DNA of 60,532 nucleotides, filler included, from Platydemus manokwari (lineage: Eukaryota), in NCBI GenBank assembly GCA_037951405.1. It is 5 parts of 5 records of this genome, joined end to end, with 100 filler letters (N's around TTAATTAATTAA, not from the genome) between each part and the next. Parts side by side here need not be neighbours in the genome. Positions count along the whole stretch, not along the records: positions 50,562 to 60,532 come from JBBMOY011183433.1; 4 more parts are not named here. One strand, written 5' to 3'. Made by a program: the position numbers and the translations under genes. The notes beneath the pieces are model-generated. The model was not told the DNA's origin, searched no databases, and saw only the letters and a program-made list of their open reading frames with translations. Positions 9,181-60,398 of the stretch are shown piece by piece. Position 1 is the first letter of the stretch, and each line of letters opens with the position of its first letter.

Positions 9181-9501
9181 CTTTCCTGTGTTCCGTCTGG
9201 TTTGGCATACCTTGCAGACTGTACACCATTCGTGTATGTCTTTTTTCATATTTAGCCAATAGTATTTTTGTCAGATACGGCTCATGGTTTTCCTGGCGGG
9301 CAGGTTTCCACCTAAAGTTCCGTCGTGATACTGTAGAAGTACTATATTTCGTAGAACTTGGGGTAAGACGATGAGATTATTGCTATCGGTTTGATACTTC
9401 ACGATATCGGCTTGGATAAGAAATCTTCCTTGTTCTCCTTTGATTTGTTTGAGTTTTTTGTCTAAGACGTAAGGTCTACTCGTTTTGTAATTTCTGACCA
9501 T
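9181..9501 (-). pseudogene. Integrase N-terminal zinc-binding (HHCC-type) region, truncated before the DDE core
   Basis: LIVLPQVLRNIVLLQYHDGTLGGNLPARKTMSRI*QKYYWLNMKKDIHEWCTVCKVCQTRR, with an in-frame stop and the second His replaced by Asn. Confidence 0.85.
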
Positions 9502-10295
9502 TGTTCTGTTTTGTATTCTATTGTTTTTACAATTTGCATAATGTCATCATCCTCTTTTTGCAATGCTGCTATATCATATTGGTTGCTTAATGTTTGGTTA
9601 GCAGTGAGTATAATTTCGGCAGTGACTTCATATTCTGTAGTGTCGGTTCGGGATAATACGTCAGCATTTCCGTTGGCTTTGCCTTTTCTATAGCACAGCT
9701 TGATATTGTATTGTCGTAGCTTTAAAGCCCATCTGATGAGTCTTGAGGCTGTGCCTCTGTGTTGCAACAACCATTGTAAAGGTTTGTGATCTGTGGTTTC
9801 GACTCGTGGTGGGATTTCTCCGGTTTCTCCTACATAAATTTCTGCATCGCCTCGTCTTTTCTGTTTGGCGATGGAAATTAATTTCCCTGTGCTGCAATCG
9901 TACACATTATCTTTCAATTGTTTTATTGCATCTTGTCCAACTACGAAATGAGATAGTGCCCCTGTTGATACTCTGGCTTCGACTGTTAACATCTGATTGC
10001 AGATGTGTAACCTACATGGTAGTATTTCTAATAAAGGCAGTTTTGTTCCATTGATTCCAACTATAAGCAGCTGATTTTCATCTTTAATGAGGTTTTGCAT
10101 TTCTATGTGGTTTAGTATTTCCGACCTGATGATAGTGACATCAGCTCCTGTATCTATGAGTGCCATTACAGAGTGGCGGTTAAGTTTTATCTGCATGAGT
10201 CCATTTCTGCCTGTGCTGGCTACGTGGACGTAATCTACCAATCCTCGCTGGTTTTGTCCTTTGATCCTTATGTCATCTTCCTGGTTGTCGATCAT
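9462..10295 (-). pseudogene. Retropepsin protease fused in frame to the RNase H C-terminus (RT deleted)
   Basis: MALIDTGADVTII...FVVGQDAI (protease), then directly TDHKPLQWLL...RLIRWALKLRQYNIKLCYRKGKANGNADVLSR (Ty3/gypsy RNase H end). Confidence 0.88.
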
Positions 10296-10599
10296 TGCCT
10301 ATAGCTCCGTTGTAGGATAAGTTTTCCGTTTGTCATTTCGAGATTTCCCTACAGGTTCCTTGAATTCTTGTTCATTTGAGTCTCCTTGTCTGATCGGTAT
10401 GTCTTGCTCGACTTGTACTAGGCAATAAGGTGGTGCACTGACTGTTGGCTGGTGCCACTGGATGTCACCATGTGTATTTGTGTACCTTTTGGTTTAATTC
10501 TTTCTGTCCAACTTGTAAATGCGTTGGAATATTCTTCATCGCTTTCGTCATTTGTTGACCATCTTGGTTTCCGGATGGTATGTTGCTTTTCCTCCATCC

Positions 10600-12320
10600 A
10601 CGTTTTCGTTTGTTTTATTTCCCTTCGGTGTTGTGCATGTATAAAGTGGTCGGCGCCGGGTGGACATAGTGCCAATAGAATTCTTCTGGTGCATCCGAAG
10701 GCTCGGTATAATAAAAACGCTGTCATTGCTCGGTGAAAAAAGAATGTTCCAAATGTCATAAAGCTACCCCAAATTTGGTACATGAAATTAACGGCGGCTT
10801 TCATGCAATGTTCGGCGGTAACCAGGTTTTCATAGTCTGATCCTTGATCCATCCTGGTAAATTCGTCTGATTATCTCAGTAATGCCTCAATCCCTTAGTT
10901 GCGGAAACATTAACGCTCGTCTAGCATCTTCGATATCTTTTGAGTTTATCGGTCCTAAACTGACACGTCCCTCTATTTCACTTAGATTTAGTGTCTGTAC
11001 TGGTAGGCGTGGTAATCCTCTTGATAATAGTGTCATCCATGCATTCTTAATCTTGTATAGTGGTGCAAAAAGTGGTGTGCACGTTCCCTTTGTAGGCTTG
11101 GCGTTTGGCTCCAATAGTATCCTGGTAATTGAAACCCTATATCTGCTTTTCCCTTGATACATGACCTTTAATTCGTTTGTGCATTCATGTCCATGAGCCA
11201 TCATGACTTGTACCTCTGTACAGTGAAACTCGTACCAGGCTTCTCCATTTACCTTGCCATATTGTTCTTTTTCCATGATGATGGGTGTGATTAAGTTTGG
11301 ATTCGCTATGGCAATAGCTAGTCGGTTGGCAGTTGACAATTAGTGTTTCCTGGTAGATCTCGAGTAGCTGTGACTGTAAGTCATGGTAGAGGAAGTCTCC
11401 TTTATTGTTCATATAGCTGGCAAGTTTAATGTCATTTTTGTGAAGTGTTTGTGCGTTTTTTAGCTTCTCTTTGCTGTAATAGACACCTTCATAATTGGTA
11501 CTGTGATTGGTGCTTTGGTTACTAGTCGAATGACGTCGGAAGACTTGTTTGACATCAGTATTGTAGATACGGCGCGTTCCTTTCTGTCTGAGCGCTCTGC
11601 AGCTCTTTCTAATTGTTTGTCGGTTACATGGGTGCCTGTTCGTTTCTCATAGACTAGCTTGGTACCAGTTATAGCAATGAATGGTCCGCTTTTAAGTAGT
11701 ATCATTTCACAGTTCTACAATTTCCGTGTTGTAAGTAACACTTTGGGTATTGTGTCATTAATCCGGTTTTGGCATCAAATGTTGCCTCAAAAGAGTGTAG
11801 TTCCACTCGGTTATCTTCAATGGTTACTAACCAGGAGGTAGATACTCCGTCCTGAAACTTGGTTCTTCCGGTACATTCTCTATTATGAGTTATTGTTCCA
11901 CCACTGGTTATTATCTCTTGCGTAATCATGTTTGGTTCTACCGTTAAACTTAGTTCAGTGTCGATACGCAGTTTTTTGGTTACGAATCCATCTCGGTAGT
12001 CGATTGGTGCTATGTTCAATATTCGTGGGATTAGTTTAGCGTCTAGTACCACTGTTCTACTATGGTATCCGCAGTAGTACTCGAAAGTTGCTACCTCAAC
12101 TCGGCATTCTTGTACCATGGCTCGTATGAAGTCATTCTCTTGGTAGATGTAATAAGTGTCTGGTTCACTTTTCTGTAACTGGTGCGGTCGCACGGTTGGG
12201 CAATTTATAGAGTCCACTAGAGAGTAGATATTGGATATCTTTGCTTTTCCGTAATCGTAGGCTTGAAGTAGAGTGGTTTTCCCTATTAGACTCATGATTA
12301 GCAGGATTTTGAGTAGTCCT
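10600..12320 (-). pseudogene. Chuvirus-like envelope glycoprotein of element A (frameshifted)
   Basis: Hydrophobic signal LLKILLIMSLIG, then AYD(Y)G..YSLVDSINCP, ECRVEVATFEYYCGYHS, YMNNKGDFLYH, AIANPNLITPI, GEAWYEFHCTEVQV..HECTNELKVMY, ITRILL, DIEDARRALMFP and TM region WGSFMTFGTFF..FGCTRRILLALCPP. Confidence 0.75.
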
Positions 12321-12385
12321 CCTAAATCGTATCCTTGGTTGCTTGAGTGTTTTATGTTTGCTTTATGTTTATCTGGCTTTCGGTT

Positions 12386-12765
12386 TAAGGTGGTCCATCC
12401 ACCTTTGTCTTCTAACCATTGGATTAGGTATCTTTGGCACGTCTGCGATGCTTGCATAACGACATCTTTAAAATGACTCGGTTCCTGATAGGATGAGGTG
12501 ATGATCTGCTGTATCAGGTATGTGAGGGCTACTTTTACGCTCTCCAGGGTCAGTCCTTCCTGAGTTAGTTCAGCTATTATGGTACGTGGGTTGGCATCTC
12601 CCTGGTTTAGTATCTGTTTCATCTTTAGCAGGTATCTTCGGATTGAGCGTATAACCCTTTCGTGCCCGTCGGTTTCTTGGTTAGGGATTCGCGGATTATG
12701 CTGTTCTACCCCGTGTGGTAATGTTAACAAGATTGTTTGGATATCCGTCTCTCGGGTATCGTGGT
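12386..12765 (-). other. Bcl-2-fold-like domain in the element A polyprotein
   Basis: BH4-like HDTRETDIQTILLTLPHG, BH1-position AELTQEGLTLESV (NWGR absent) and BH2-like RYLIQWLEDKGGWTTL with near Bcl-2 spacing, followed by a hydrophobic tail. Confidence 0.6.
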
Positions 12766-13259
12766 TAGCGTCTGCTACTTTTCTCAGGATTTTTGCCTGG
12801 ATTTTGGCGCAAGTCTTCTCGTTTCGTTCCTCCATGAAAGGTGGTCTACCTCGTTTCCGTTTGTTGAACGCTTGTGATTCGGTTTCTAATTCGTGCATGA
12901 TTTTCGTGATAGGTTCGATCTTGTTTTAGATTTGAACCTCTACGGGGACGTTTTCTTAGAGTTCGGTGAGGCCCTTGACGATTGGTGTGTTTAAAAATGC
13001 ATCCAAGTCGACCTCGTAGTTTGGCTGGATCTCGTTTGGTGGATCCGTATTGATTGTCCGGGCCCTTCTGGTTCGGGCGGTCTCGGAAGTGTGATAGTGG
13101 CTCGTTTCCACTAGTACTGGTATTGATTTGGCTGTGGTGATGTGCCCAGGCAGGCATCCTACATTGACCAAGTATTCATCGTCATCTACAGGGTGTTCCC
13201 ATATTGCCATGACGAATGGTTCCCGTACGGGTTGTGCTTTCTTGATGACGGTTCTCAGC

Positions 13260-13511
13260 CGTTTTACTTTGCAATAAATAGATTGCTGTGTTTCCAATGC
13301 TCCGAATTCTGGAGTGTGAATCTGCATTCTGACGCAACAGTGGGCTGTGACTCATCAGATGTCCGTTTTTCTGCAGAAATAGTTGGATTTCTACTTGGTA
13401 CTCAGAAGGCTTTCTGAGTTGCGTTACTAGCATTAGTGCTACTTTGTCTATGATATCGGTTGGCACGATGACTTGAATTATGTCTCCAAGCATTTGCTTG
13501 ATCCTTGTGGT
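13260..13511 (-). other. Ubiquitin-like domain in element A
   Basis: TRIKQMLGDIIQVIVPTDIIDKVALML aligns with ubiquitin [28 protein letters not shown]. It is followed by QLFLQKNGHLMSHSPLLRQ. Confidence 0.55.
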
Positions 13512-13724
13512 GTCATTCTGTTGCAGGGTCCTTTCTAGTTCCTGTCGTAGGCGTTCTGCCTTAGTCATCTGGATTGTGACAAGGACGTTTTCAGTTGTGA
13601 TAACTGTAATTGGCTCTGAGTCACCGGCAATGTGCTCCTCTTCTGCGGTCATCACTCTGTCAGCTCCTGTGTTGGCTGGTCACGAGTGGCCTCGTTCAGC
13701 TCCGGTATTGGCTGGTAACGAGTG

Positions 13725-50561: not shown

Positions 50562-51784
50562 TTACTTTGGATAACAGAATTGTACAAGATTTTCTTTAAT
50601 AAACACTCAATTGTTCTAAAAAATTCCGGTTTTTAAGTCATAGACCCAATATAACTACATAAAAGTCCTAATAATTTAAATAGAAGGATAATAATAAATA
50701 AACAATAGGGTTAATTAAGGTAATTAATCGATATTTATTCGCATTTATCATCGTACGAATGGAGTTTAGGTTTATACATTGATTATCAATTTCACGATAA
50801 AAACAATAATTTACTTTTATTCAGTAATAAATCTGGTATACACAGTTAAAATTCTAATAAAGTTTTCAGACCTTTAGATAATCAGTTTTCTTCCGATAGT
50901 GTAGTCATCAATACTCGCCATTGAAGACATGTCGAACCAAAAAGATATACCTCAAATATCTTTCTATTTAATATTTATTAAAATCTTTATATCAATATAA
51001 ATGACATTCTATACCAGAGCCTTCCCTCGTTTACCACTGTTTTTACCATTCATGTTTGCATAAACTGTGATTCGGAGTGATTGAGTTATTAAGCTTGATT
51101 GAGTTTTTTAATAGCGTACTGCATTATGTTAAACGAATTTCATTGTAGTAAACCTATATAAAAATATTGATATCATATGTGCTATTATTTCGATTATAAT
51201 TTCATTGTTGACTAAAATTAACGCACCTAGCGGGTTTACATCACGCTTCAACCAGTAGTACAGAACTCACACTAGAAATAAAAATAATAAACATACAATC
51301 CCAACCGTTGGAATTATTACTAATTCTTATTGATGGAATTACCATGGCATACAGCGAAAATCAAAGATTAAAAATGTTAAAAATGTTCGAATAATATGTT
51401 TTATTACATATATTAGGGTGAGTATATTATTATTAGTAAAAGTATATTATCTTATTATTTATTAGTTTTAGAAAATGGACGACGAGCACTTCATAGAACA
51501 TTTGATTATATGACAGACATTCCCAACAATTTGAAAGTCTCATCAAAGATTTTAGACGTTTCATACCAGTTACGCACCACGAATAAGTCATTAAAAAATA
51601 AAAATGGCTGATGAGGAGCTAACAATGTTCATCAATTATTTGGAAACTGAAGCAATCCCGGTGCCATTCAACCTTCTCTCTTTAAAGCAAAAAAATTTCA
51701 AATAACCTTATGATAGAAATAATACAATGGAACACGATCGGGAACCCGATGGAGAAATGAATGAATCACAAGAATATTTTATAA

Positions 51785-52711
51785 TTAAAATTGAAAATCA
51801 TCTGTCATTTCTATCCTGTTTTGTATGACTTCCGTCGTCCCTACGTCATATTCATGTTTTGCCATAATATCGTCATATTTGTCTATTATCTCTTGTAATC
51901 TCTGATTTTCTTTCTCGGTTAAATTTTCTTCTGCTATTTTGATCTTTGGATAATGTTTTATTTCTCCCAATACTGCAAATTGGTTGCTATTAATTACTTT
52001 AGCTTTTACACATCTTCCTAATACCATTCCTGATCGCAATATTTTGATATTGTTCCCATAATTGGTAACTCTTAATGGATAATATCCATTCTGTGCTGTA
52101 GCTAAAACCGAACTCATCTGAATCTCATCATCTATCTGTCGTGGTTCAAACATTAATGTTTCATTCGTGGCTTCCACCGCAATCATCAATACGCTTCCAC
52201 ATCTTGCTGGTAGCCGAACTATCTCTTGTATTCTTAGCTTATCGTCTTTATGCTGGGGTGCTTGTTTATATGATATTTGTAACGTTGTTAAATCCAGGAC
52301 TACTCCTGTTAACTGTCCCAACAAATCCATTAATATTAGTATGTCGTTTAATCCTTCTGTTACCACCTTAAATTCGTGATCTATTTGTATGTTTCCGAAC
52401 GCTATATTTATCTTCACTTTCCCAGCTGTTTCAATCCTTTTCTCTCCTGCTCTTACGAGAACATCTTTATCTCTACTTATCTTTGTTTGTTCATATTCAT
52501 TGAGTAATTCCTTTCTAATCATTGATGCCTCTGCGTCTGTGTCTATTAAGGCTCTTGCCGGCCTATTGTTCATCAATACTGTTACTATGAGCCTACGTCC
52601 CTTACCTGTTGCTGAATGTATGGTGTATACTTGTTTTACATTGCTGATTAATGGATCTCTTATTTCACTCATCATCTGTTTTTCTATCGCGTATGGGTAG
52701 TACTCATTCAT
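51785..52711 (-). pseudogene. Retropepsin protease and pre-RT linker of element B
   Basis: RALIDTDAEASMI (DTG changed to DTD), DILILMDLL, then LQEIIDKYDDIMAKHEYDVGTTEVIQNRIEMTDD, the typical lead-in to gypsy RT, where the element is cut off. Confidence 0.85.
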
Positions 52712-52902
52712 TTTCCTATATCCTGGTATCGGTTGTTCAAATAGCTTCTCTTTTCTCCCTCTATATCTTACTTCCCAGTCATCATATCCCTACGGGTAAT
52801 TTGAAGGCATTTCTAGTCTCATCATAGGATTATAGAACCCCTGATTCGTCATTTGTTGATTATACACCCCTTTATTTATTGGATTGTACATTCCTAACTC
52901 AT

Positions 52903-54830
52903 TCATCGACCACATTCCTCCTCCTCTAGCCTGTTTGGTATCTGCTTTATCTGCTCCATCTCACTCTTATGATGTGTTAGCATCATAAGCTTAGCTATTG
53001 GCGGACATATGCAACATAGTATTTTCCATAAACATCCAAAAATTTCTTGTAGCGTTTTCCCCGTAATTAGTGATGAAAATACCATTTTTATTATTACCAC
53101 TATATAATATATTCCCAGAAAGAAGGAAAATATTGTTCCTATTTCCTGGAATCTTCCATATAAACTCTTAAATAGTTATTTTACTGCTTGATTGAAATGA
53201 TCCACCGATAACAAGGCTTCATAATTTAAGGTCTCGTCTGGGCTTCCTCCTAATATTCGTTGTATCATATTCATGATTACTTTTTCTCGTTATATTGGGA
53301 ACAGCATATATTTTCGTGCTTTCTCTATGTTTTCTGCTGCATAAATTCCACTTTCATTCATGTCGTTAAATGGTTGAAATTCTATGTTCCCTGTTACTCC
53401 TGAGCTTTTTAGAATTAATATGTCCGCTCTTGATTTCTTATTCTCCGTCGACACCCATCTTCCATAATCTGTTTTAAATACTGGATCCATAACGTTTGAA
53501 CACGCGTCTATTCTCGCGACCTTGTAATGATTCTTGTTACTAATTATAAAAATACTCTCTTGTTGTTGTATATGATTGGTATCTCGTTGGTGCAGTATTC
53601 ATGTTTTCTGATCACTAAGTTGTTTACCATTTTACATTAGAAAGTATAAATGACTTCTCCCACTACTCTAGCAAATGTACCTTTATCGTCAAATATTAAT
53701 GGGGCTATCAATTCTGGATTTTTTACCGTCAATGCCATCTTTGTTTGTAGCACCTTACGCCTTAGCTTACAATCATTTAACATTATTTCTATGTACATTT
53801 TCTCTAGGTACCCCTGATTAAGGTGGTAAAAGTAATCAAGCTTGTTGATAAAATACTGAGATAACTTAATATCCAATTGATCTACCTCTGTCTTAGCATC
53901 TTTTATTTTGTTCTTACTCAGATATATTCCTTTATAGTTCGTCACTATAACTTACTGTGCACATTCCTTTGTGCACAAACCTCATGGCACTGCTTGTTTG
54001 ATCCGCCATGTATACTATTGGTGGTTCTTTCATTCTGATTTCTACCGTTTCCGTTGGTGTGTCTAGATTTAATTCCTTGGAAAATTTTGTTTCCTTAAAT
54101 ATTTTTCCTTTTATTTCTCTAAATTCCGTTTTTTTGAGCAATGTCAGTGGACTCTTATACGGATTGCTCTTGTACATTATTAGTGATTCCCCCGTATCAC
54201 ATGTTGAATTATCGTATTCGCAATGTGTCCATGTGGTCATTTTCCTTGTTTTTCCATCAAAAGTGGTTTGATATTCTCGCAATTCTATAATATAGTGCCT
54301 GTATGTCATTACATGTTTTACTACCTTTCCATCTATCATGCAATTTCCTCCTTCGGAATATGCCCCATTACTAGACCAACCTGCTTGATTTACTGTGTAC
54401 CTGTTTATTCGTACTGGTGACACCACTACTTGTATTCCTTTTGGTGTTTGGTAAATTCCCTTCTCAAATGCAGCTTTATAACTTTCCACTGACGGTATTT
54501 CTGGTACTAGTAACCATGCCAGCACCAGTGTTACTGTGTATCATATTCTCTTATATGAACAATGAAAAGCACTTAATGATATACAATCTTACATTCCTTT
54601 GCTTTTTCAAACAGAAACTCAGATTCCTAATATACATACATTTCCTTTGGTCTTGACTGTATAATATTTACTGGATATGCCTCTGGGCATTGTTCAATAT
54701 CCAATAGTGAATATTTCTTTCCCCATCGTGGTTTGCCGCAGTCATATCCACTTATTCCGGCATTCGCGCCCCCTATACTGCTTATTACGTATATTGCGAA
54801 TAACGTCTGGACTATTGTTGCCAGTGTAGA
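52903..54830 (-). pseudogene. Chuvirus-like envelope glycoprotein of element B (frameshifted)
   Basis: Signal TLATIVQTLFAIYVISSIGGANAG, then GYDCGKPRWGKKYSLLDIEQCP, HCEYDNSTCDTG, YFINKLDYFYH, NDCKLRRKVLQTKMALTVKNPELIAPLI, ARVVGEVIYTF, GIYAAENIEKARKYMLFP and TM YGRFQEIGTIFSFFLGIYYIVVIIK..FGCLWKILCCICPP. Confidence 0.8.
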
Positions 54831-55694
54831 CCCTGCTCCCCGTACTAGTTTTTCGCGCTCTGGCTTTTTCACTCCCTTTAATAACGTAGTAACCACTGTA
54901 GTCCATCCTCCTAATTCATTTACCATGTCTTCGTATTCATCGTATATTATTTCTGCTCCTTGATCAATACTTACCTTTGTCTTTGGTCTCTGCATTAGTT
55001 TATTGTGCCGTATGTGTTTGTTGACTTTCGTTCAATAATTCTTGATCAAAAATATTGGAATAGCTCTTCATGATTATCATATCTTTAATGATTTTCCTCT
55101 CCCAGCACTTCTGGCAACTCCTCCGTTCGTAATTCTTCTCCTGGTGGCTTTGATACATTTTTTTCCTCATCACTTATTTCTTCTAATGATGTCATCCTCT
55201 TCTTCTATTGCCTTACTACATTCTCCTTCCTTATACGGATACACTATCTTCTTCCTCAACACCCTTTCCTGTTCTTTACTGGTATTGTTTTCTAATTCCA
55301 GTGCCTCTTTTCGTTCCTCTTGTATTTGTTTTATTACATTTTCTCGCGGTTCCCCTTTCTCTGTTGTATTTTCCTTATTTGGGCATTTATGTTTTTGCTT
55401 CTCTATACATCCTAAACATAAGTATCTTTTCTCTATCTCCTTTTGGAGCTGACTTTTCGGCATTCTTTCCATAATGTCCAATGAACTATCTCTTCCTTTC
55501 GTTCTTAATTCCAGCGCCTTTAGGAAATCTTCGCAGGAATTCAATTCACTTGATTTGGAATTTGACGACTTATAGCTAGGTGATTTTTCTTCATTAGCTT
55601 TTGTTGCTGCGGTGACTTCTTCTTCATCCAAATCTACTCCTATTATTTGATTGGCATTTATATATAGTTCCCTTATTTCTTTTTCGACCGGTTC

Positions 55695-58473
55695 TTTATA
55701 CTTGATTAGGACTCCTAAATTATTTAAAATTGTACGATTCAAATGATACTGTTCTAGCAGATACCTGCTTCTCAGTCTTATCCCCTTATTGTAAATCGTG
55801 ATACTTAGTTTATTGACATGTTCTCTCATTAAAAATTTTTGTCTATTATATTCCTTCATTGTTTTCACTACCACGTCTCCTGGCCAACTCATTATGTGAT
55901 CTTTCTCTTCTGTCCACGGGCTTTCCCATATTCGTAATTTGAATGGGTAGCAATTATAATCCATTCTACCTCTGTGTCTTAAGTAGACATAATTTACTCT
56001 TCTTTCTGATAACTTGTAGTCCTTTAATTGACTCCCTTCCACAAATAACTCTTCACTATTCGTTCTCTTTGAATGATGATACGTGAGATATCCATTTTCA
56101 TTCCTATCTGGCCATAGCTCATCTGCCCAATTTAATATAAATCGGATTTCTGCCTTTTCTAACTTTTCAGTTTTTCCACATGTGGCTGTCCATGCTGTCT
56201 TGGCACCAAATGCAAATCTATTATTCGTTGATTATTTATTGTTGCAGGTAACTTTTCCTATTTTACATCATGTGTGAATGGTAACTCTGGAATGGTTGTC
56301 CTGTGAAATGTCAAAGATCTCCATTTAAAGAATGTTCTGGATTTTCGGGGCTTCCATGTTGATCCTTCCCCTTGATGGATCATGACCTCTACAACATTTC
56401 GTCTTCTTCTTTTTATTAAATAATGCCTGCATGTTTTATCATCTTCCATAAACATCCCGTGGTGTATTAATTCCACTAGGAATGGTTTGAATGTCGCGAA
56501 CGGCCACATTGCTGTTGCCATTTGTCGAAACCTTCGTATACTTTCTACTTCGCTTACCATTACCACTCTTATTTGGTGCTGTTGCAGTATACTGGTCATC
56601 ATCATTACTGCTTCAGCCAATTCATCCTTATTCTGTTCATTTGTATTACTATCTGTTGGGGCCTGGGTTGTTGTTGCTTTTTCTGTTGCCATTCTGCTGA
56701 TTCCTGTTCTCCTCCTGGTTGCTCATCTTCACTACTGTCTCCGTCTGAGCCTTCTTTATTTATCATATTAATTTGTAAAATTATCTTGGCCTCCTCTGTT
56801 ATTATATCGATGGCTAAACATCAATTTCCCTGGTCTTTCTTTATGTATTCTCCTATACATTTCCACTCTGTCATACCTTTGTCCTTGAAACTCATTTTCA
56901 CCTTTCCTTTTATTTTTTTCCAACTCCTCCGGCCAATCCAATATTATCAACTTCCTAATCAGTTGGACTGATGTAGACATATTTAATTCCATGTCTTGTT
57001 GCACTTGCTTTCCTTCACTATCCTGTATTATTAATATAAATTTCCTCTTAATCCCGTTATATTTATTGGTGTCTCCTTGAGGGAATTCTCTTTCCCTTTC
57101 CTTCAGTTGTCCCCTTTAGGCCTGTCTCCACAAATCAAATTGTTTTCCTTGCTCGTACCGTATTATTAATTTATTAAATTCATATATAATTTCCTCTGTC
57201 ATATTTATCCTTTATAACTTCTCCCGTATTCTATACGCTTATCTTTCCACACAATAAGGGTTTGTGAAGTATTTTCTCTCCTTAAGCTGTGGATATTTGA
57301 ATGCTATTACCTCTTGACTCATTTCGATTGCATCCGTTCTTGCTACTCCATTTTTACTAACTTTTCTTCTATTTTGTCGAGTCTGTCCATCCATATGGAA
57401 TCTGGCCTCATCTAAAATTCATGACATTGCCGTCTCTTTTTCCATGCTTGATTTATTTTTATGTCTTTCCGTCTTAATACCGTTCGCATCTTTCTTGTGT
57501 CCCTACCGTGATTCTCTCTTCTCCGAATATTGATATTATTGCTTGAATCCGTTCCATTTCATCTCTTGCATCTGGTTTCCTGATACAACTCATCATATTT
57601 ACTTCCTTCGTCTCCTTTTTTTGTTTCTTCCGCCATTCTCTTTTTTTATAATAATATGCACTATAATGCGCAATTATGGTTAACTCATTATGCGTTTTTT
57701 GCGTCATCCCTAAATCACTTAATATCACCTCTTCTTAGACTGGTGTTCCCTTATGCCATGCTTCCACTCAGCATTCAGGATCTTCCTCATTTGGCCAAAA
57801 ACCAAACGTCCATTGCAATATTTCGCTTATGCTTGAATCTTCATCTACCGTAAGTGATTTTATTGTTGCTCTCCCTTTATTATTTCACTGTTAGCTTTCT
57901 TTCTTCGTGCACCAATTTTTCACAATGACTTCATGGGTATAATTTTACAATCCCGTTTTCTATTATTCCATTTGGATATCTCTTCGGGTTTTTCATTACC
58001 ACTATTTTGTTTATCTGTCCACGTCATCCTTGCATGAACATCATTATTTCATCTAAACCCAGTACCCATTCATCCGTCCATCCTGTATACTTATATTTCC
58101 ATCTCCTCTCCATTAACAATTCCAATTTTGGTACCGTCTCTTTTCCTTTAGTAGTTATCCACTCACAATGACTATCCTCCTCTTCACTAACCATTTGGAA
58201 TTCTATTATCACTTTTCCTTCTGATTTTCTTAGATTCTCTCTTCCTCTTTCTATATCATCAAAAGCTGTTCCTCCTCTAACTGTAACTTTTATCTGTCCC
58301 CTATGTCCATACACCGGTTGTGTTTTTATCTTTATTTGCTCAGCTTCCCATAACACCGGACATCGTTTAGCTATGTCTCTGTATATTTTATTCATTGAAT
58401 CATTCAAATTTATTTCTACATAAATTTGTTTCTTAACTCCATATCTATCTTTAACCAGGATTGCCAATTCATA
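55695..58473 (-). other. Array of up to five ubiquitin-fold domains (about 58190-58473, 57665-57900, 56770-57050, 55975-56225, 55695-55946)
   Basis: Each unit shows strand-strand-helix plus, in four, a ubiquitin-like G-x2-L-x5-L-x2-Y/L end: HKGTPV*EEVILSDLGM, FKDKGMTEWKCIGEY, FVEGSQLKDYKL..VYLRHRG and NKGIRLRSRYLLEQYHL. A helix-terminal WP/CP occurs in four units. Confidence 0.55.
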
Positions 58474-60398
58474 TTCTCCTTCTTCTGCATTCTTTCTGGG
58501 TTTTTCTTTAGCATCCATTTTATCATATATCCCTTTACTCTCTAATATTTTCATCAATAGCTGTTCCGCCCGTGCCTCTTTTTCTAAATAATTTGTTTCC
58601 GCTGTATTTCCCCATTCTGGATGCATTTCTTCCTCGTGCTATCAGCAATCTTTTACATGTTCCTACTATCCCTAGTCTTTCTTCCTCCTCATTTATTTCT
58701 GATGTCGTTTCTTCCCTTATTATTTTACTTTTTGTTGCTGTTAGCTGAATCAGTAAATATCCTGCCTTCTTTCCAAATTTTTTAACTCCTTCTATTATTT
58801 GCTGGAATTCAAGGGCATTACTTTTCTCGAAAAATGGCATTCCTATCCTCAGCTTCTGTTCATGTGTTAACAGTCGTTTTAATCTTATTATTACGCTTGG
58901 CGGTTCATTTTCCACTATTCTCCATACCTGAGGATCGAAAGTTCCTTCTCTATTTTCTCTAATTCTCTTTTCACTTGGTGCTTCATTTATTAATTCTCTA
59001 AATATGTCTATCAACGTTTGCACATTAATGTGGTCCATATTCTCCTGTGTTAGCTTCATCCACAATCCATCTTTATCTTCTTGTGGCAACTGCTTCCATA
59101 TGTTATCCATTTTTTCATCGATATCTCCATATCCCTTTCCACATCCTCGTAGTCTTTCTACAAACTCGTCCATAACCTGATAGTCAATTTCTCTATTGAC
59201 TAGATATTGTCCCAGATATCCAGCTTCCTTATTAGTTGTAGAATGTCCTTCCATTGTTACCAATTTTGACGGGACATATATTGGTGACGTTGCTGGCACA
59301 TTTAATACTTTTGGCAGTATTCTTTCAATTACTGGTATTGGTAAAGCTGGTTTTACTGGAATATTTCCTAACAGTACTGCCACTGCTGCTTTGTATTTCC
59401 TTCTTCGTATTACTGGGTCATTTTGAGCATATTTCTCCCCCTTTTTATTTCACCATCTTCCTCACACTTATTTCGTGGCCTTTTAGTTGACAATTCCTTA
59501 TTTCCTATGCACCATTCTACTGGCCTTCCTGTCTCTTCTGTGACATCTATTACTTGGAGATTTTGTTTCTCTTCCCAAATATCATTGATTTCATCTGGTG
59601 AACTAACTTCCTCCATTTCTGATTCTGATTCTATTTCGGATTTTATGCTATTTTCGTCCGCTGTTGCCTTATTTGACACTTCTTCCCCATGCTCTTCTTT
59701 TTTCATCAACTGCTCTTCTGTCTCCACCAGCGTGAATTCTTCCTTATTTTTGTTAACATTCTCCCAAAATTGCTTATTCGATGGTATTCCCGTTATTTGA
59801 CTTAATGTGCAATTCATAAATCTCTGACAAAGTGTTTTCACATTAATTTTATCCCTATCTCTTGTATTATATGTATTATATTTTTCTATTTCCATATATT
59901 TCTCCCATATATTTGTTACAATATTCACACTGGATTCTTCCGTTGCTATTCACCCTGTCTCTCTCATAATTACTTTATTTTGTTTGATTATTGTCATAAC
60001 TTCTCCTATTGGATCCCTCTGCTGACTGACTTCTGGGTCTATTACCCCTTTGCATTTCATTATTATAATAATTATTGTAATTGGCTCTATAGTTCCTCCA
60101 TTGGCTATCAACATTTCGACTGTTAAATTGTGCATAATAATTATTATTTTTATTCCAACGGTAATTGCGATTATTTGCTGGGCTCCTGCTTCTATAATCA
60201 TCATTATTCCTATCTGGAACTCCATTTCTATCACCATTATACTTATTGTCACTATATCTTTGGTCATTTCGCCTATAATTATTATTGTTATATCATCGGT
60301 ATCCATCATCATTGTATCTTCGATCACTTTGTCGATAATTACTATAATTATTATTCCTATTATTGTCCTGATTCCGCGCGCACTCATTATTAACATTC

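What the first reader, a model, noticed from the sequence alone, without database searches (positions are those of the whole stretch)
51785..60398. Enveloped gypsy-type retroelement with env upstream of pol, in a polyprotein carrying ubiquitin-like and Bcl-2-like cargo
Seen in sequence: element B and the distantly related element A (9181-13724) share the order UBL(s) > PFxxxIWExP unit > GGWTT (BH2-like) > hydrophobic signal > YD(C)G glycoprotein > TM > WSxN tail > protease. Element A continues into a Ty3/gypsy RNase H tail and integrase Zn domain. Established: env-bearing LTR elements normally place env 3' of pol as a separate ORF. Inference: this is a lineage of infectious or cell-to-cell-moving retroelements with a virus-like polyprotein and host-modulating accessory domains. 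The same layout in two very diverged copies argues it was selected rather than a chance nesting.
Basis: partly seen in the sequence, partly recalled or inferred. Interest (0 to 1): 0.93.

Follow-up and report, generated by a model that had tools for sequence, protein, structure and literature searches.

The report
Decayed Burro-like enveloped retroelement copy
This is a broken, cut-off copy of a giant gypsy-type retroelement with a virus-derived envelope gene between its gag side and its protease; the layout is real but was already published for the Burro elements of planarians.

Summary
The glycoprotein is a genuine class III viral fusion protein (Pfam PF24664, three colinear pieces, E down to 6e-14). 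A retropepsin follows it (29 bits, above the Pfam cut-off). Natural relatives from metagenome assemblies carry gag motifs, this glycoprotein, protease, RT, RNase H and integrase in one uninterrupted ORF of 2,100-4,800 aa. So 'env upstream of pol in a polyprotein' holds for the lineage.

This copy is dead. Env and its tail hold at least 4 frame changes and 3 in-frame stops. The upstream part holds roughly ten more frame changes. Homology stops about 45 residues before the RT domain, so RT, RNase H and integrase are absent.

The Bcl-2-like claim rests here on a BH2-like remnant. Four relatives have a fuller domain at that position (Bcl-xL, profile E 2e-3). The ubiquitin-like claim rests on two sub-threshold Pfam hits.

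The layout SUMO-like > BCL-2 > Env > PR, with env in frame between gag and pol, was published for planarian Burro/GYPSM1 elements (PMC6431247). GAG-ENV-POL order is also reported for flatworm, nematode and bryozoan elements (PMC13524379). The finding is real, and it is a new member of a known kind.

The parts
54825..60396 (-). 5' part of the polyprotein region (gag side and accessory modules), broken; no family assigned as a whole
   Evidence: Coding-like composition and skew. No Pfam, PDB-sequence or relative match for most of it. About 10 frame changes and 3 in-frame stops along the chain of longest open stretches, counted without a guide.
59978..60292 (-). N/R/Y-rich low-complexity stretch, likely the true frame at the 5' end
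   Evidence: Translation. tblastn E 1.6e-5, without low-complexity filter, to the stretch just before the zinc knuckles of P0046/P0048. The similarity may be compositional.
56816..57058 (-). ubiquitin-like candidate 1 (SUMO-like)
   Evidence: Pfam Rad60-SLD_2 PF13881, E 0.045, 14.3 bits, below the cut-off of 23.
56348..56590 (-). ubiquitin-like candidate 2
   Evidence: Pfam ubiquitin PF00240, E 0.015, 15.4 bits, below the cut-off of 25.4, profile positions 40-71 of 72. RAD23 UBL in PDB at E 1.1 only.
   Evidence: phmmer against PDB: ASH2L N-terminal domain (3rsn, 3s32), E 0.012-0.014 over 52 residues. No Pfam hit. Motif absent from all 60 relatives.
55383..55418 (-). Cys/His motif with non-canonical zinc-knuckle spacing
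   Evidence: Read from the translation. No zf-CCHC Pfam hit at E<=1. May be chance.
54885..54983 (-). BH2-like remnant of a Bcl-2-like module (holds GGWTT)
   Evidence: A profile built from relatives only hits here, E 0.002 among 18 segments. GGW is invariant in alignments A1/A3. No Pfam or PDB hit for the window sequence itself.
54756..54824 (-). hydrophobic stretch: internal signal peptide of Env, in the position of a Bcl-2 tail anchor
   Evidence: Translation. Every one of 14 relatives has a hydrophobic stretch at this place, followed by the conserved YDC start of the mature protein.
52901..54824 (-). env: class III fusion glycoprotein of Monjiviricetes type, broken (one part, signal to WSxN tail)
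   Evidence: Pfam PF24664 on three colinear pieces: E 6e-14, 1e-5, 4e-13, profile positions 291-624 of 653. The N-terminal pieces match relatives at E 1e-13 to 4e-22. With its tail it holds at least 4 frame changes and 3 in-frame stops.
53065..53142 (-). transmembrane anchor of Env
   Evidence: Translation. Lies within Pfam profile positions 537-624.
52316..52585 (-). retropepsin (protease) domain
   Evidence: Pfam gag-asp_proteas PF13975, E 1.6e-6, 29.0 bits, above the cut-off of 28.2. Colinear with the protease next to RT in relatives. No stop or frame change inside the domain. The active-site motif is non-canonical in this copy.
51788..52315 (-). linker after the protease and first residues before RT; the element is cut off here
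   Evidence: Aligns to P0004 up to residue 1404, where RVT_1 starts at 1449. No RT, RNase H or integrase homology anywhere else in the piece.
50562..51787 (.). AT-rich flank, not part of the element as far as can be seen
   Evidence: GC 26-28%, no ORF of 60 codons or more on either strand, no homology to relatives.

Best explanation
The stretch 51788-60396 (minus strand) is a dead, 3'-truncated copy of a giant Ty3/gypsy-type LTR retroelement of the kind published as Burro in planarians. In working members, one very long ORF encodes, in order: Gag (capsid and zinc knuckles), accessory host-like modules (ubiquitin/SUMO-like, Bcl-2-like), a class III fusion glycoprotein taken from a negative-strand RNA virus (chu-like or mononegavirus-like), one or more retropepsins, RT, RNase H and integrase. 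The order and the single ORF in relatives are shown; what follows is inferred. The hydrophobic stretch before the conserved YDC start acts as an internal signal. This puts the Env ectodomain into the ER lumen, while the Gag-side modules stay cytosolic. The Env transmembrane anchor brings the chain back, so that tail, protease and Pol are cytosolic. Signal peptidase cuts at the lumenal side and the retropepsin cuts the cytosolic junctions, much as in a flavivirus-type polyprotein. After the signal cut, the Bcl-2-like module would keep that hydrophobic stretch as a C-terminal tail anchor, the normal topology of Bcl-2 proteins. The accessory modules plausibly act on host cell death and ubiquitin pathways. 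In this copy none of that can happen. Env and the upstream part are broken many times, and RT, RNase H and integrase are missing.
For: Env identity. The env part of the P0039 model matches GP64, gB and Thogoto Gp (E 1e-5) and chu-like, xinmo, qin and nya virus glycoproteins (E down to 6e-19). Single ORF in relatives: P0004 (2855 aa) has G 133-813 > PR x2 > RVT_1 1449 > RNase H > IN. P0020, P0010, P0030, P0041, P0043 (4844 aa) and P0045-P0049 show the same order. Gag motifs sit upstream in the same ORF in P0022, P0030, P0007, P0046 and P0039. These proteins come from ENA metagenome assemblies and one NCBI MAG, i.e. gene calls without introns (inference from usual practice). The window is colinear with them from the pre-signal stretch to just before RT. 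Bcl-2-like module directly before the env signal: Pfam PF00452 in P0002 (E 9.6e-4), P0039 (E 0.055) and P0012 (E 0.2), all ending at the profile's end. Bcl-xL in PDB scores E 0.01 for P0002 alone and 2e-3 for profile A1, and nearly all of the 60 listed of 102 hits at E<=1 are Bcl-2 family. The window retains the BH2-like part. Published match: Burro ORF1 with Ubi2/SUMO-like > BCL-2 > Env (mononegavirus-like) > PR, env in frame between gag and pol, and decaying copies in Dugesia japonica (PMC6431247).
Against: No Burro reference sequence could be compared, and the host of the window is unknown, so membership in Burro proper is by layout only. MATH, BIR, Smc, ankyrin and dUTPase motifs reported for Burro were not found in the window. 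Nothing upstream of the BH2-like remnant matches any relative. The ubiquitin-like hits are below the Pfam cut-offs. The single-sequence fold of one candidate region was uninformative (pLDDT 35). The Bcl-2-like part of the P0039 model has only pLDDT 50-59. No LTR lies in the piece. The membrane topology and processing scheme are inference.
Confidence: 0.8

Rival explanations
1. It belongs to a GAG-ENV-POL 'errantivirus' lineage of the kind catalogued for Platyhelminthes, Nematoda and Bryozoa. In those, gag, env and pol are three neighbouring ORFs and not one polyprotein, and the lineage is not Burro-like.
For: That order is reported for flatworms (PMC13524379). This copy is too broken to show frame continuity. 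A Cys/His motif lies not far upstream of env, as at the end of a gag. None of the Burro accessory motifs except the weak UBL and BH2-like ones was found.
Against: All long relatives found with the window's env piece carry env and pol, and often gag motifs, in one ORF. The stretch before the signal, which holds the BH2-like motif, is conserved with relatives and continuous with env in them. The published catalogue allowed gaps between ORFs and did not test for fusion, so the two descriptions may overlap.
Confidence: 0.12
2. Chance neighbourhood: a non-retroviral endogenous viral element (a glycoprotein gene of a chu-like RNA virus) landed next to an unrelated gypsy protease fragment.
For: Chuvirus-derived glycoprotein insertions are common in invertebrate genomes (PMC7642597 and PMC10084718). 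This copy has no RT or integrase and no LTRs.
Against: Env pieces, tail and protease are colinear with more than ten relatives in which they form one ORF. Composition and strand skew are uniform over the whole 8.6 kb.
Confidence: 0.03
3. A host gene domesticated from such an element, for example a fusogen or a Bcl-2-like regulator.
For: Env and gag genes are repeatedly domesticated in animals (established knowledge).
Against: There are at least 4 frame changes and 3 in-frame stops in env and its tail, and many more upstream. No long open frame exists.
Confidence: 0.01

Closest known systems
Burro / GYPSM1 giant Ty3/gypsy-like LTR retroelements of planarians (Jurka 2007; Grohme et al. 2018; Arkhipova & Yushenova 2019, PMC6431247)
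   Same: Order ubiquitin/SUMO-like > BCL-2-like > Env of mononegavirus type > protease. Env lies between gag and pol in the polyprotein. Decayed copies with stops and frameshifts are reported in one planarian genome.
   Different: MATH, BIR, Smc, ankyrin and dUTPase motifs were not detected here. A possible ASH2-type winged-helix unit is not listed for Burro. No sequence comparison with a Burro reference was possible, and the host is unknown.
GAG-ENV-POL 'errantiviruses' of Platyhelminthes, Nematoda and Bryozoa (Chary & Hayashi, PMC13524379) and the non-canonical nematode ERVs of Sacco et al. 2022 (cited there)
   Same: Ty3/gypsy pol with a class III ('HSV/gB-type') env placed before pol.
   Different: They are described as separate neighbouring ORFs, and no accessory Bcl-2-like or ubiquitin-like modules are mentioned (no occurrence of those words).
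Mosquito BEL/Pao elements, and arthropod gypsy elements, carrying a Chuviridae-like glycoprotein (Dezordi et al. 2020, PMC7642597; PMC13524379 methods)
   Same: An env captured from a chu-like negative-strand RNA virus, in the same Pfam family and class III fold.
   Different: A different retroelement superfamily (BEL/Pao) or a different env position, and arthropod hosts.
Glycoproteins of Jingchuvirales and Mononegavirales (Pfam PF24664 Monjiviricetes_fusion)
   Same: Sequence family and fold of the env.
   Different: Here the gene is embedded in a reverse-transcribing element and preceded by host-like modules.
Flavivirus/pestivirus-type polyproteins (analogy only, from established knowledge)
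   Same: An internal signal sequence and transmembrane anchors would sort lumenal glycoprotein and cytosolic enzymes from one chain.
   Different: There is no sequence relationship, and the topology here is inferred and not shown.

Membership tests
Ty3/gypsy (Metaviridae) LTR retroelement | Pair of long terminal repeats | tested here: inconclusive
   No long direct repeat in the 9,971-base piece. The element is cut at the 3' side and its 5' end may lie at or beyond the piece edge.
Ty3/gypsy (Metaviridae) LTR retroelement | Retropepsin domain | tested here: met
   PF13975, 29.0 bits against a cut-off of 28.2, E 1.6e-6.
Ty3/gypsy (Metaviridae) LTR retroelement | RT > RNase H > integrase in that order | tested here: not met
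   Absent from this piece: homology ends about 45 residues before RVT_1. Relatives have RVT_1 > RT_RNaseH > Integrase_H2C2 > rve, and the A2 profile search also returned a fungal gypsy pol (E 6e-133), so the lineage qualifies but this copy does not show it.
Ty3/gypsy (Metaviridae) LTR retroelement | Gag with capsid and CCHC knuckle | tested here: inconclusive
   No Pfam or PDB hit in the window, only a non-canonical Cys/His motif. Relatives have Retrotrans_gag, Ty3_capsid, an Arc-like capsid and zf-CCHC.
Burro-like giant planarian elements | Env between gag side and protease, in frame in the polyprotein | tested here: inconclusive
   The order is met. The frame cannot be judged in this broken copy. 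It is met in relatives.
Burro-like giant planarian elements | BCL-2-like module directly upstream of Env | tested here: inconclusive
   Only a BH2-like remnant in the window. A fuller module is present in P0002, P0012, P0039 and P0036.
Burro-like giant planarian elements | Ubi2/SUMO-like module upstream of BCL-2 | tested here: inconclusive
   Two sub-threshold hits in the right place: Rad60-SLD_2 at E 0.045 and ubiquitin at E 0.015. The fold of a third UBL-looking stretch (58027-58638, not one of the two Pfam candidates) was uninformative.
Burro-like giant planarian elements | Sequence similarity to Burro-1 to -4 / GYPSM1 references; planarian host | not testable with these tools
   No Repbase or Dfam reference or planarian genome is at hand. 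Look-ups of source contigs were left out (see referred steps).
Class III viral fusion glycoprotein, Pfam PF24664 | Match above the family's gathering score | tested here: met
   51.3 and 48.5 bits on two pieces against a cut-off of 27; a third piece scores 24.0 bits.
Class III viral fusion glycoprotein, Pfam PF24664 | Signal peptide, ectodomain, C-terminal membrane anchor | tested here: met
   Hydrophobic stretch, conserved mature start and transmembrane stretch in the right order.
Class III viral fusion glycoprotein, Pfam PF24664 | Class III fold | tested here: met
   Met for a relative only: the env part of the P0039 model (pLDDT 70-90) matches GP64, gB and Thogoto Gp with probability 1.00. 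The window's own env was not folded.
Bcl-2 family | Helical bundle with BH1 and BH2, usually with a C-terminal tail anchor | tested here: inconclusive
   Window: no Pfam or PDB hit. Relatives: BH1-BH2 stretch matches at E 1e-3 to 2e-3, below the Pfam cut-off of 31.4 bits. The model shows seven helices but pLDDT 50-59. A hydrophobic stretch follows 25-40 residues after GGW.
Ubiquitin-like (beta-grasp) domains | Match to a ubiquitin-family profile or a beta-grasp fold | tested here: inconclusive
   Only sub-threshold profile hits and no confident model.

The most novel reading that the evidence does not exclude
This is a separate branch of the Burro-like elements with cargo of its own. In addition, one hydrophobic stretch would serve both as the tail anchor of the Bcl-2-like module and as the signal peptide of Env, giving a retroelement a flavivirus-like membrane-threaded polyprotein.
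Probability: 0.25. Interest if true: 0.5.

Novelty: new member of a known kind. Interest (0 to 1): 0.25.

Why it matters
It matters little for novelty, since env in frame between gag and pol, with Bcl-2-like and SUMO-like modules before it, has been in print since 2018-2019. It is still useful in three ways. First, the lineage is wider than the planarian references: dozens of uninterrupted 2,000-4,800-residue ORFs with the same order sit unnamed in metagenome assemblies, and one is filed under a bacterial MAG. Second, the Bcl-2-like module sits immediately before the env signal, which suggests a concrete topology for how such a polyprotein is sorted. Third, it flags one possible extra module, the ASH2-like winged helix. 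This particular copy is a fossil.

Tried and rejected
- **Word-index searches:** the window's protease stretch found nothing, and P0039 residues 430-790 found only itself. The lineage is thinly sampled.
- **Upstream stretches against relatives:** local blastp and phmmer of all upstream window stretches against the 44 and then 60 relatives gave no credible match.
- **Internal repeats:** none was found among the upstream stretches, so tandem UBL repeats are not supported by sequence.
- **PDB-sequence searches of window stretches:** no Bcl-2, ubiquitin or capsid hit was significant.
- **dUTPase between protease and RT,** as in Burro: no Pfam hit.
- **AlphaFold on one UBL-looking stretch without an alignment:** pLDDT 35, useless.
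- **AlphaFold on relative P0039 with five sequences:** only the env part is confident. The stretch with the weak ubiquitin hit came out helical at pLDDT below 50, which settles nothing.
- **LTRs, tRNA genes or a primer-binding site in the piece:** none found.
it rests on an isoleucine-rich ATG ORF, and the other frame there is the more likely one.
- **Sacco et al. 2022:** the paper is not held and is cited only through PMC13524379.

Full report
**What is in the piece.** Coding-like sequence lies on the minus strand from about 60396 down to 51788. There GC is 34-38% and both skews are strongly negative. The flank 50562-51787 has 26-28% GC and no ORF of 60 codons or more on either strand. The longest open stretch is 353 codons. 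The piece holds no long direct repeat, no tRNA gene and no recognisable primer-binding site.

**The observation.**
- ubiquitin-like candidates at 56816-57058 and 56348-56590;
- PFKLRIWESP at 55917-55946;
- GGWTT at 54897-54911;
- a hydrophobic stretch at 54756-54824;
- YDCG at 54735-54746;
- a transmembrane stretch at 53065-53142;
- WSMN at 52901-52912;
- a retropepsin domain at 52316-52585.

**The glycoprotein.** Three separate pieces of the gene hit Pfam PF24664 (Monjiviricetes_fusion) in colinear order. They cover profile positions 291-379, 419-495 and 537-624 of 653, at E 6e-14, 1e-5 and 4e-13. An exhaustive HMMER search with the best piece found 39 proteins, the closest 48% identical. The N-terminal pieces, which Pfam misses, match those relatives at E 1e-13 to 4e-22. 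A model of relative P0039 is confident only in its env part. That part matches baculovirus GP64, herpesvirus gB and Thogoto virus Gp in the PDB (E about 1e-5, probability 1.00). Among predicted viral structures it matches glycoproteins of chu-like, xinmo-, qin- and nya-viruses (E down to 6e-19). So env is a class III fusogen of negative-strand RNA virus type.

**Env upstream of pol in one polyprotein.** This holds in natural relatives.
- P0004 (2855 aa) reads G 133-813, two retropepsins, RVT_1 1449-1606, RNase H, and integrase 1915-2135.
- P0010, P0020, P0030, P0041 and P0043 (4844 aa, four retropepsin copies, ankyrin, C2H2) have the same order, as do P0045-P0049.
- Gag motifs lie upstream in the same ORF: Retrotrans_gag in P0022; Ty3_capsid (weak) and zf-CCHC in P0030; zf-CCHC in P0007 and P0046; an Arc-like capsid (dArc2, E 0.007) and zf-CCHC in P0039.
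- These proteins come from ENA metagenome assemblies on contigs of 6-31 kb, and one is from an NCBI MAG labelled Flavobacteriaceae. Such gene calls do not model introns, so I take them as continuous ORFs. This is an inference from usual practice, not a reading of the DNA.
- The window is colinear with them from the pre-signal stretch to just before RT.

**State of this copy.** Env with its tail has at least 4 frame changes and 3 in-frame stops. The upstream part has roughly 10 frame changes and 3 in-frame stops along the chain of longest open stretches, counted without a guide. The protease domain has no stop or frame change, but its active-site motif is non-canonical. Homology ends at 51797, about 45 residues before RVT_1 begins in P0004. 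RT, RNase H and integrase are absent from the piece: one truncation.

**Bcl-2-like module.** In the window itself neither Pfam nor the PDB sequences report anything. Relatives give more.
- In the alignment of the stretch before env, all 15 sequences share the hydrophobic signal and the conserved mature start. GGW recurs in the window, P0002, P0012, P0036 and P0039, preceded five residues earlier by an aromatic residue in those four relatives.
- Pfam PF00452 hits exactly there: P0002 at E 9.6e-4, P0039 at E 0.055 (profile 6-100 of 100) and P0012 at E 0.2. All are below the gathering score.
- Against PDB sequences, P0002 alone gives Bcl-xL at E 0.01. Profile A1 gives Bcl-xL at E 2e-3, and nearly all of the 60 listed of 102 hits at E<=1 are Bcl-2 family members.
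- A profile built from the relatives only finds the window's BH2-like stretch (E 0.002 among 18 segments) and nothing of the rest of the domain.
- The P0039 model shows seven helices there, at pLDDT 50-59, which is not decisive.

My reading is that a Bcl-2-like module is likely real in part of the lineage, and that the window keeps only its last part.

**Ubiquitin-like modules.** Only two sub-threshold Pfam hits support them: Rad60-SLD_2 at E 0.045 and ubiquitin at E 0.015. A weak ubiquitin hit in P0039 (E 0.031) adds little. PDB sequences give nothing significant. There is no internal repeat. The single-sequence fold of another UBL-looking stretch was useless (pLDDT 35). The positions do fit the published SUMO-like module upstream of BCL-2 in Burro. 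The claim is plausible but not shown here.

**The PFxxxIWExP unit.** It aligns over 52 residues with the winged-helix part of the ASH2L N-terminal domain (3rsn, 3s32; E 0.012-0.014). Pfam is silent and no relative has the motif. After about ten such searches, a hit of this strength is a lead and not a result.

**The rest of the upstream 3 kb.** It has no assignable family. At the 5' end, the frame with an N/R/Y-rich stretch resembles the stretch before the zinc knuckles of P0046 and P0048. This may be compositional.

**What is already known.**
- Arkhipova and Yushenova (PMC6431247) describe the planarian Burro/GYPSM1 elements, drawing on Jurka 2007 and Grohme et al. 2018. These have one ORF1 polyprotein of 4,873 aa: Gag with CCHC knuckles, then MATH_TRAF_C, Ubi2/SUMO-like, BCL-2, an Env with hits to mononegavirus fusion glycoproteins, PR, dUTPase and RT-RH-IN.
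[quoted passage not shown] They also note decaying copies with stops and frameshifts in Dugesia japonica.
- Chary and Hayashi (PMC13524379) report GAG-ENV-POL order for gypsy elements of Platyhelminthes, Nematoda (after Sacco et al. 2022) and Bryozoa, and chuvirus-like glycoproteins next to gypsy pol in arthropods.
- Dezordi et al. (PMC7642597) report the mosquito BEL/Pao case.
- Burro1 is expressed and PIWI-controlled in planarians (PMC8532177).

**How it most likely works (working members; inferred).** The hydrophobic stretch is an internal signal. The Env ectodomain enters the ER lumen, and the Env anchor returns the chain to the cytosol, where tail, protease and Pol lie. Signal peptidase and the retropepsin(s) release the parts. 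After the signal cut, the Bcl-2-like module would end in that hydrophobic stretch, which is the usual tail-anchored topology of Bcl-2 proteins. UBL-looking stretches in the window are followed by Arg-Gly-Gly-like ends, so host ubiquitin-type hydrolases might add cuts; this is speculation.

- I did not fetch genomic DNA around the intact relatives, nor look up the source contig of this piece. As a result the host, the LTRs and the ORF continuity at DNA level remain unchecked.
- The alignment tool printed a consensus line.

Noticed in passing
No such module is listed for Burro. Pfam gives nothing.
   Followed up: partly
window 59978-60292 (minus): An N/R/Y-rich low-complexity frame at the 5' end resembles the stretch before the zinc knuckles of relatives P0046 and P0048.
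   Followed up: partly
window 56771-57115 and 58027-58638 (minus): UBL-looking stretches are followed by Arg-Gly-Gly-like ends, as at the C-terminus of ubiquitin-type modules. This raises the untested idea that host hydrolases help cut the polyprotein.
   Followed up: no
window 52316-52585 (minus): The protease domain is open, but its active-site motif departs from the usual retropepsin form in this copy.
   Followed up: no
window 50562-51797: Homology to relatives stops abruptly just before RT. What follows is AT-rich (26-28% GC) with no ORF, so the element was truncated by a deletion or by another sequence of unknown nature.
   Followed up: partly
relatives P0043, P0007, P0046, P0048 (proteins, no locus): Relatives carry two to four tandem retropepsin domains, ankyrin and C2H2 motifs between env and RT, a tail of about 1,000-1,700 residues after integrase, and in P0048 a further protease-like domain after integrase.
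   Followed up: partly
relative P0010 = NCBI HBK71150.1: A 2,627-residue env-PR-RT-RNase H-IN ORF is filed as a hypothetical protein of a 'Flavobacteriaceae bacterium' MAG. This is very likely a mis-binned eukaryotic contig.
   Followed up: no
relative P0039, residues 25-178: Its N-terminus matches the Drosophila Arc2 capsid domain in the PDB (E 0.007). This ties the Gag of this lineage to Ty3/gypsy-type capsids.
   Followed up: no
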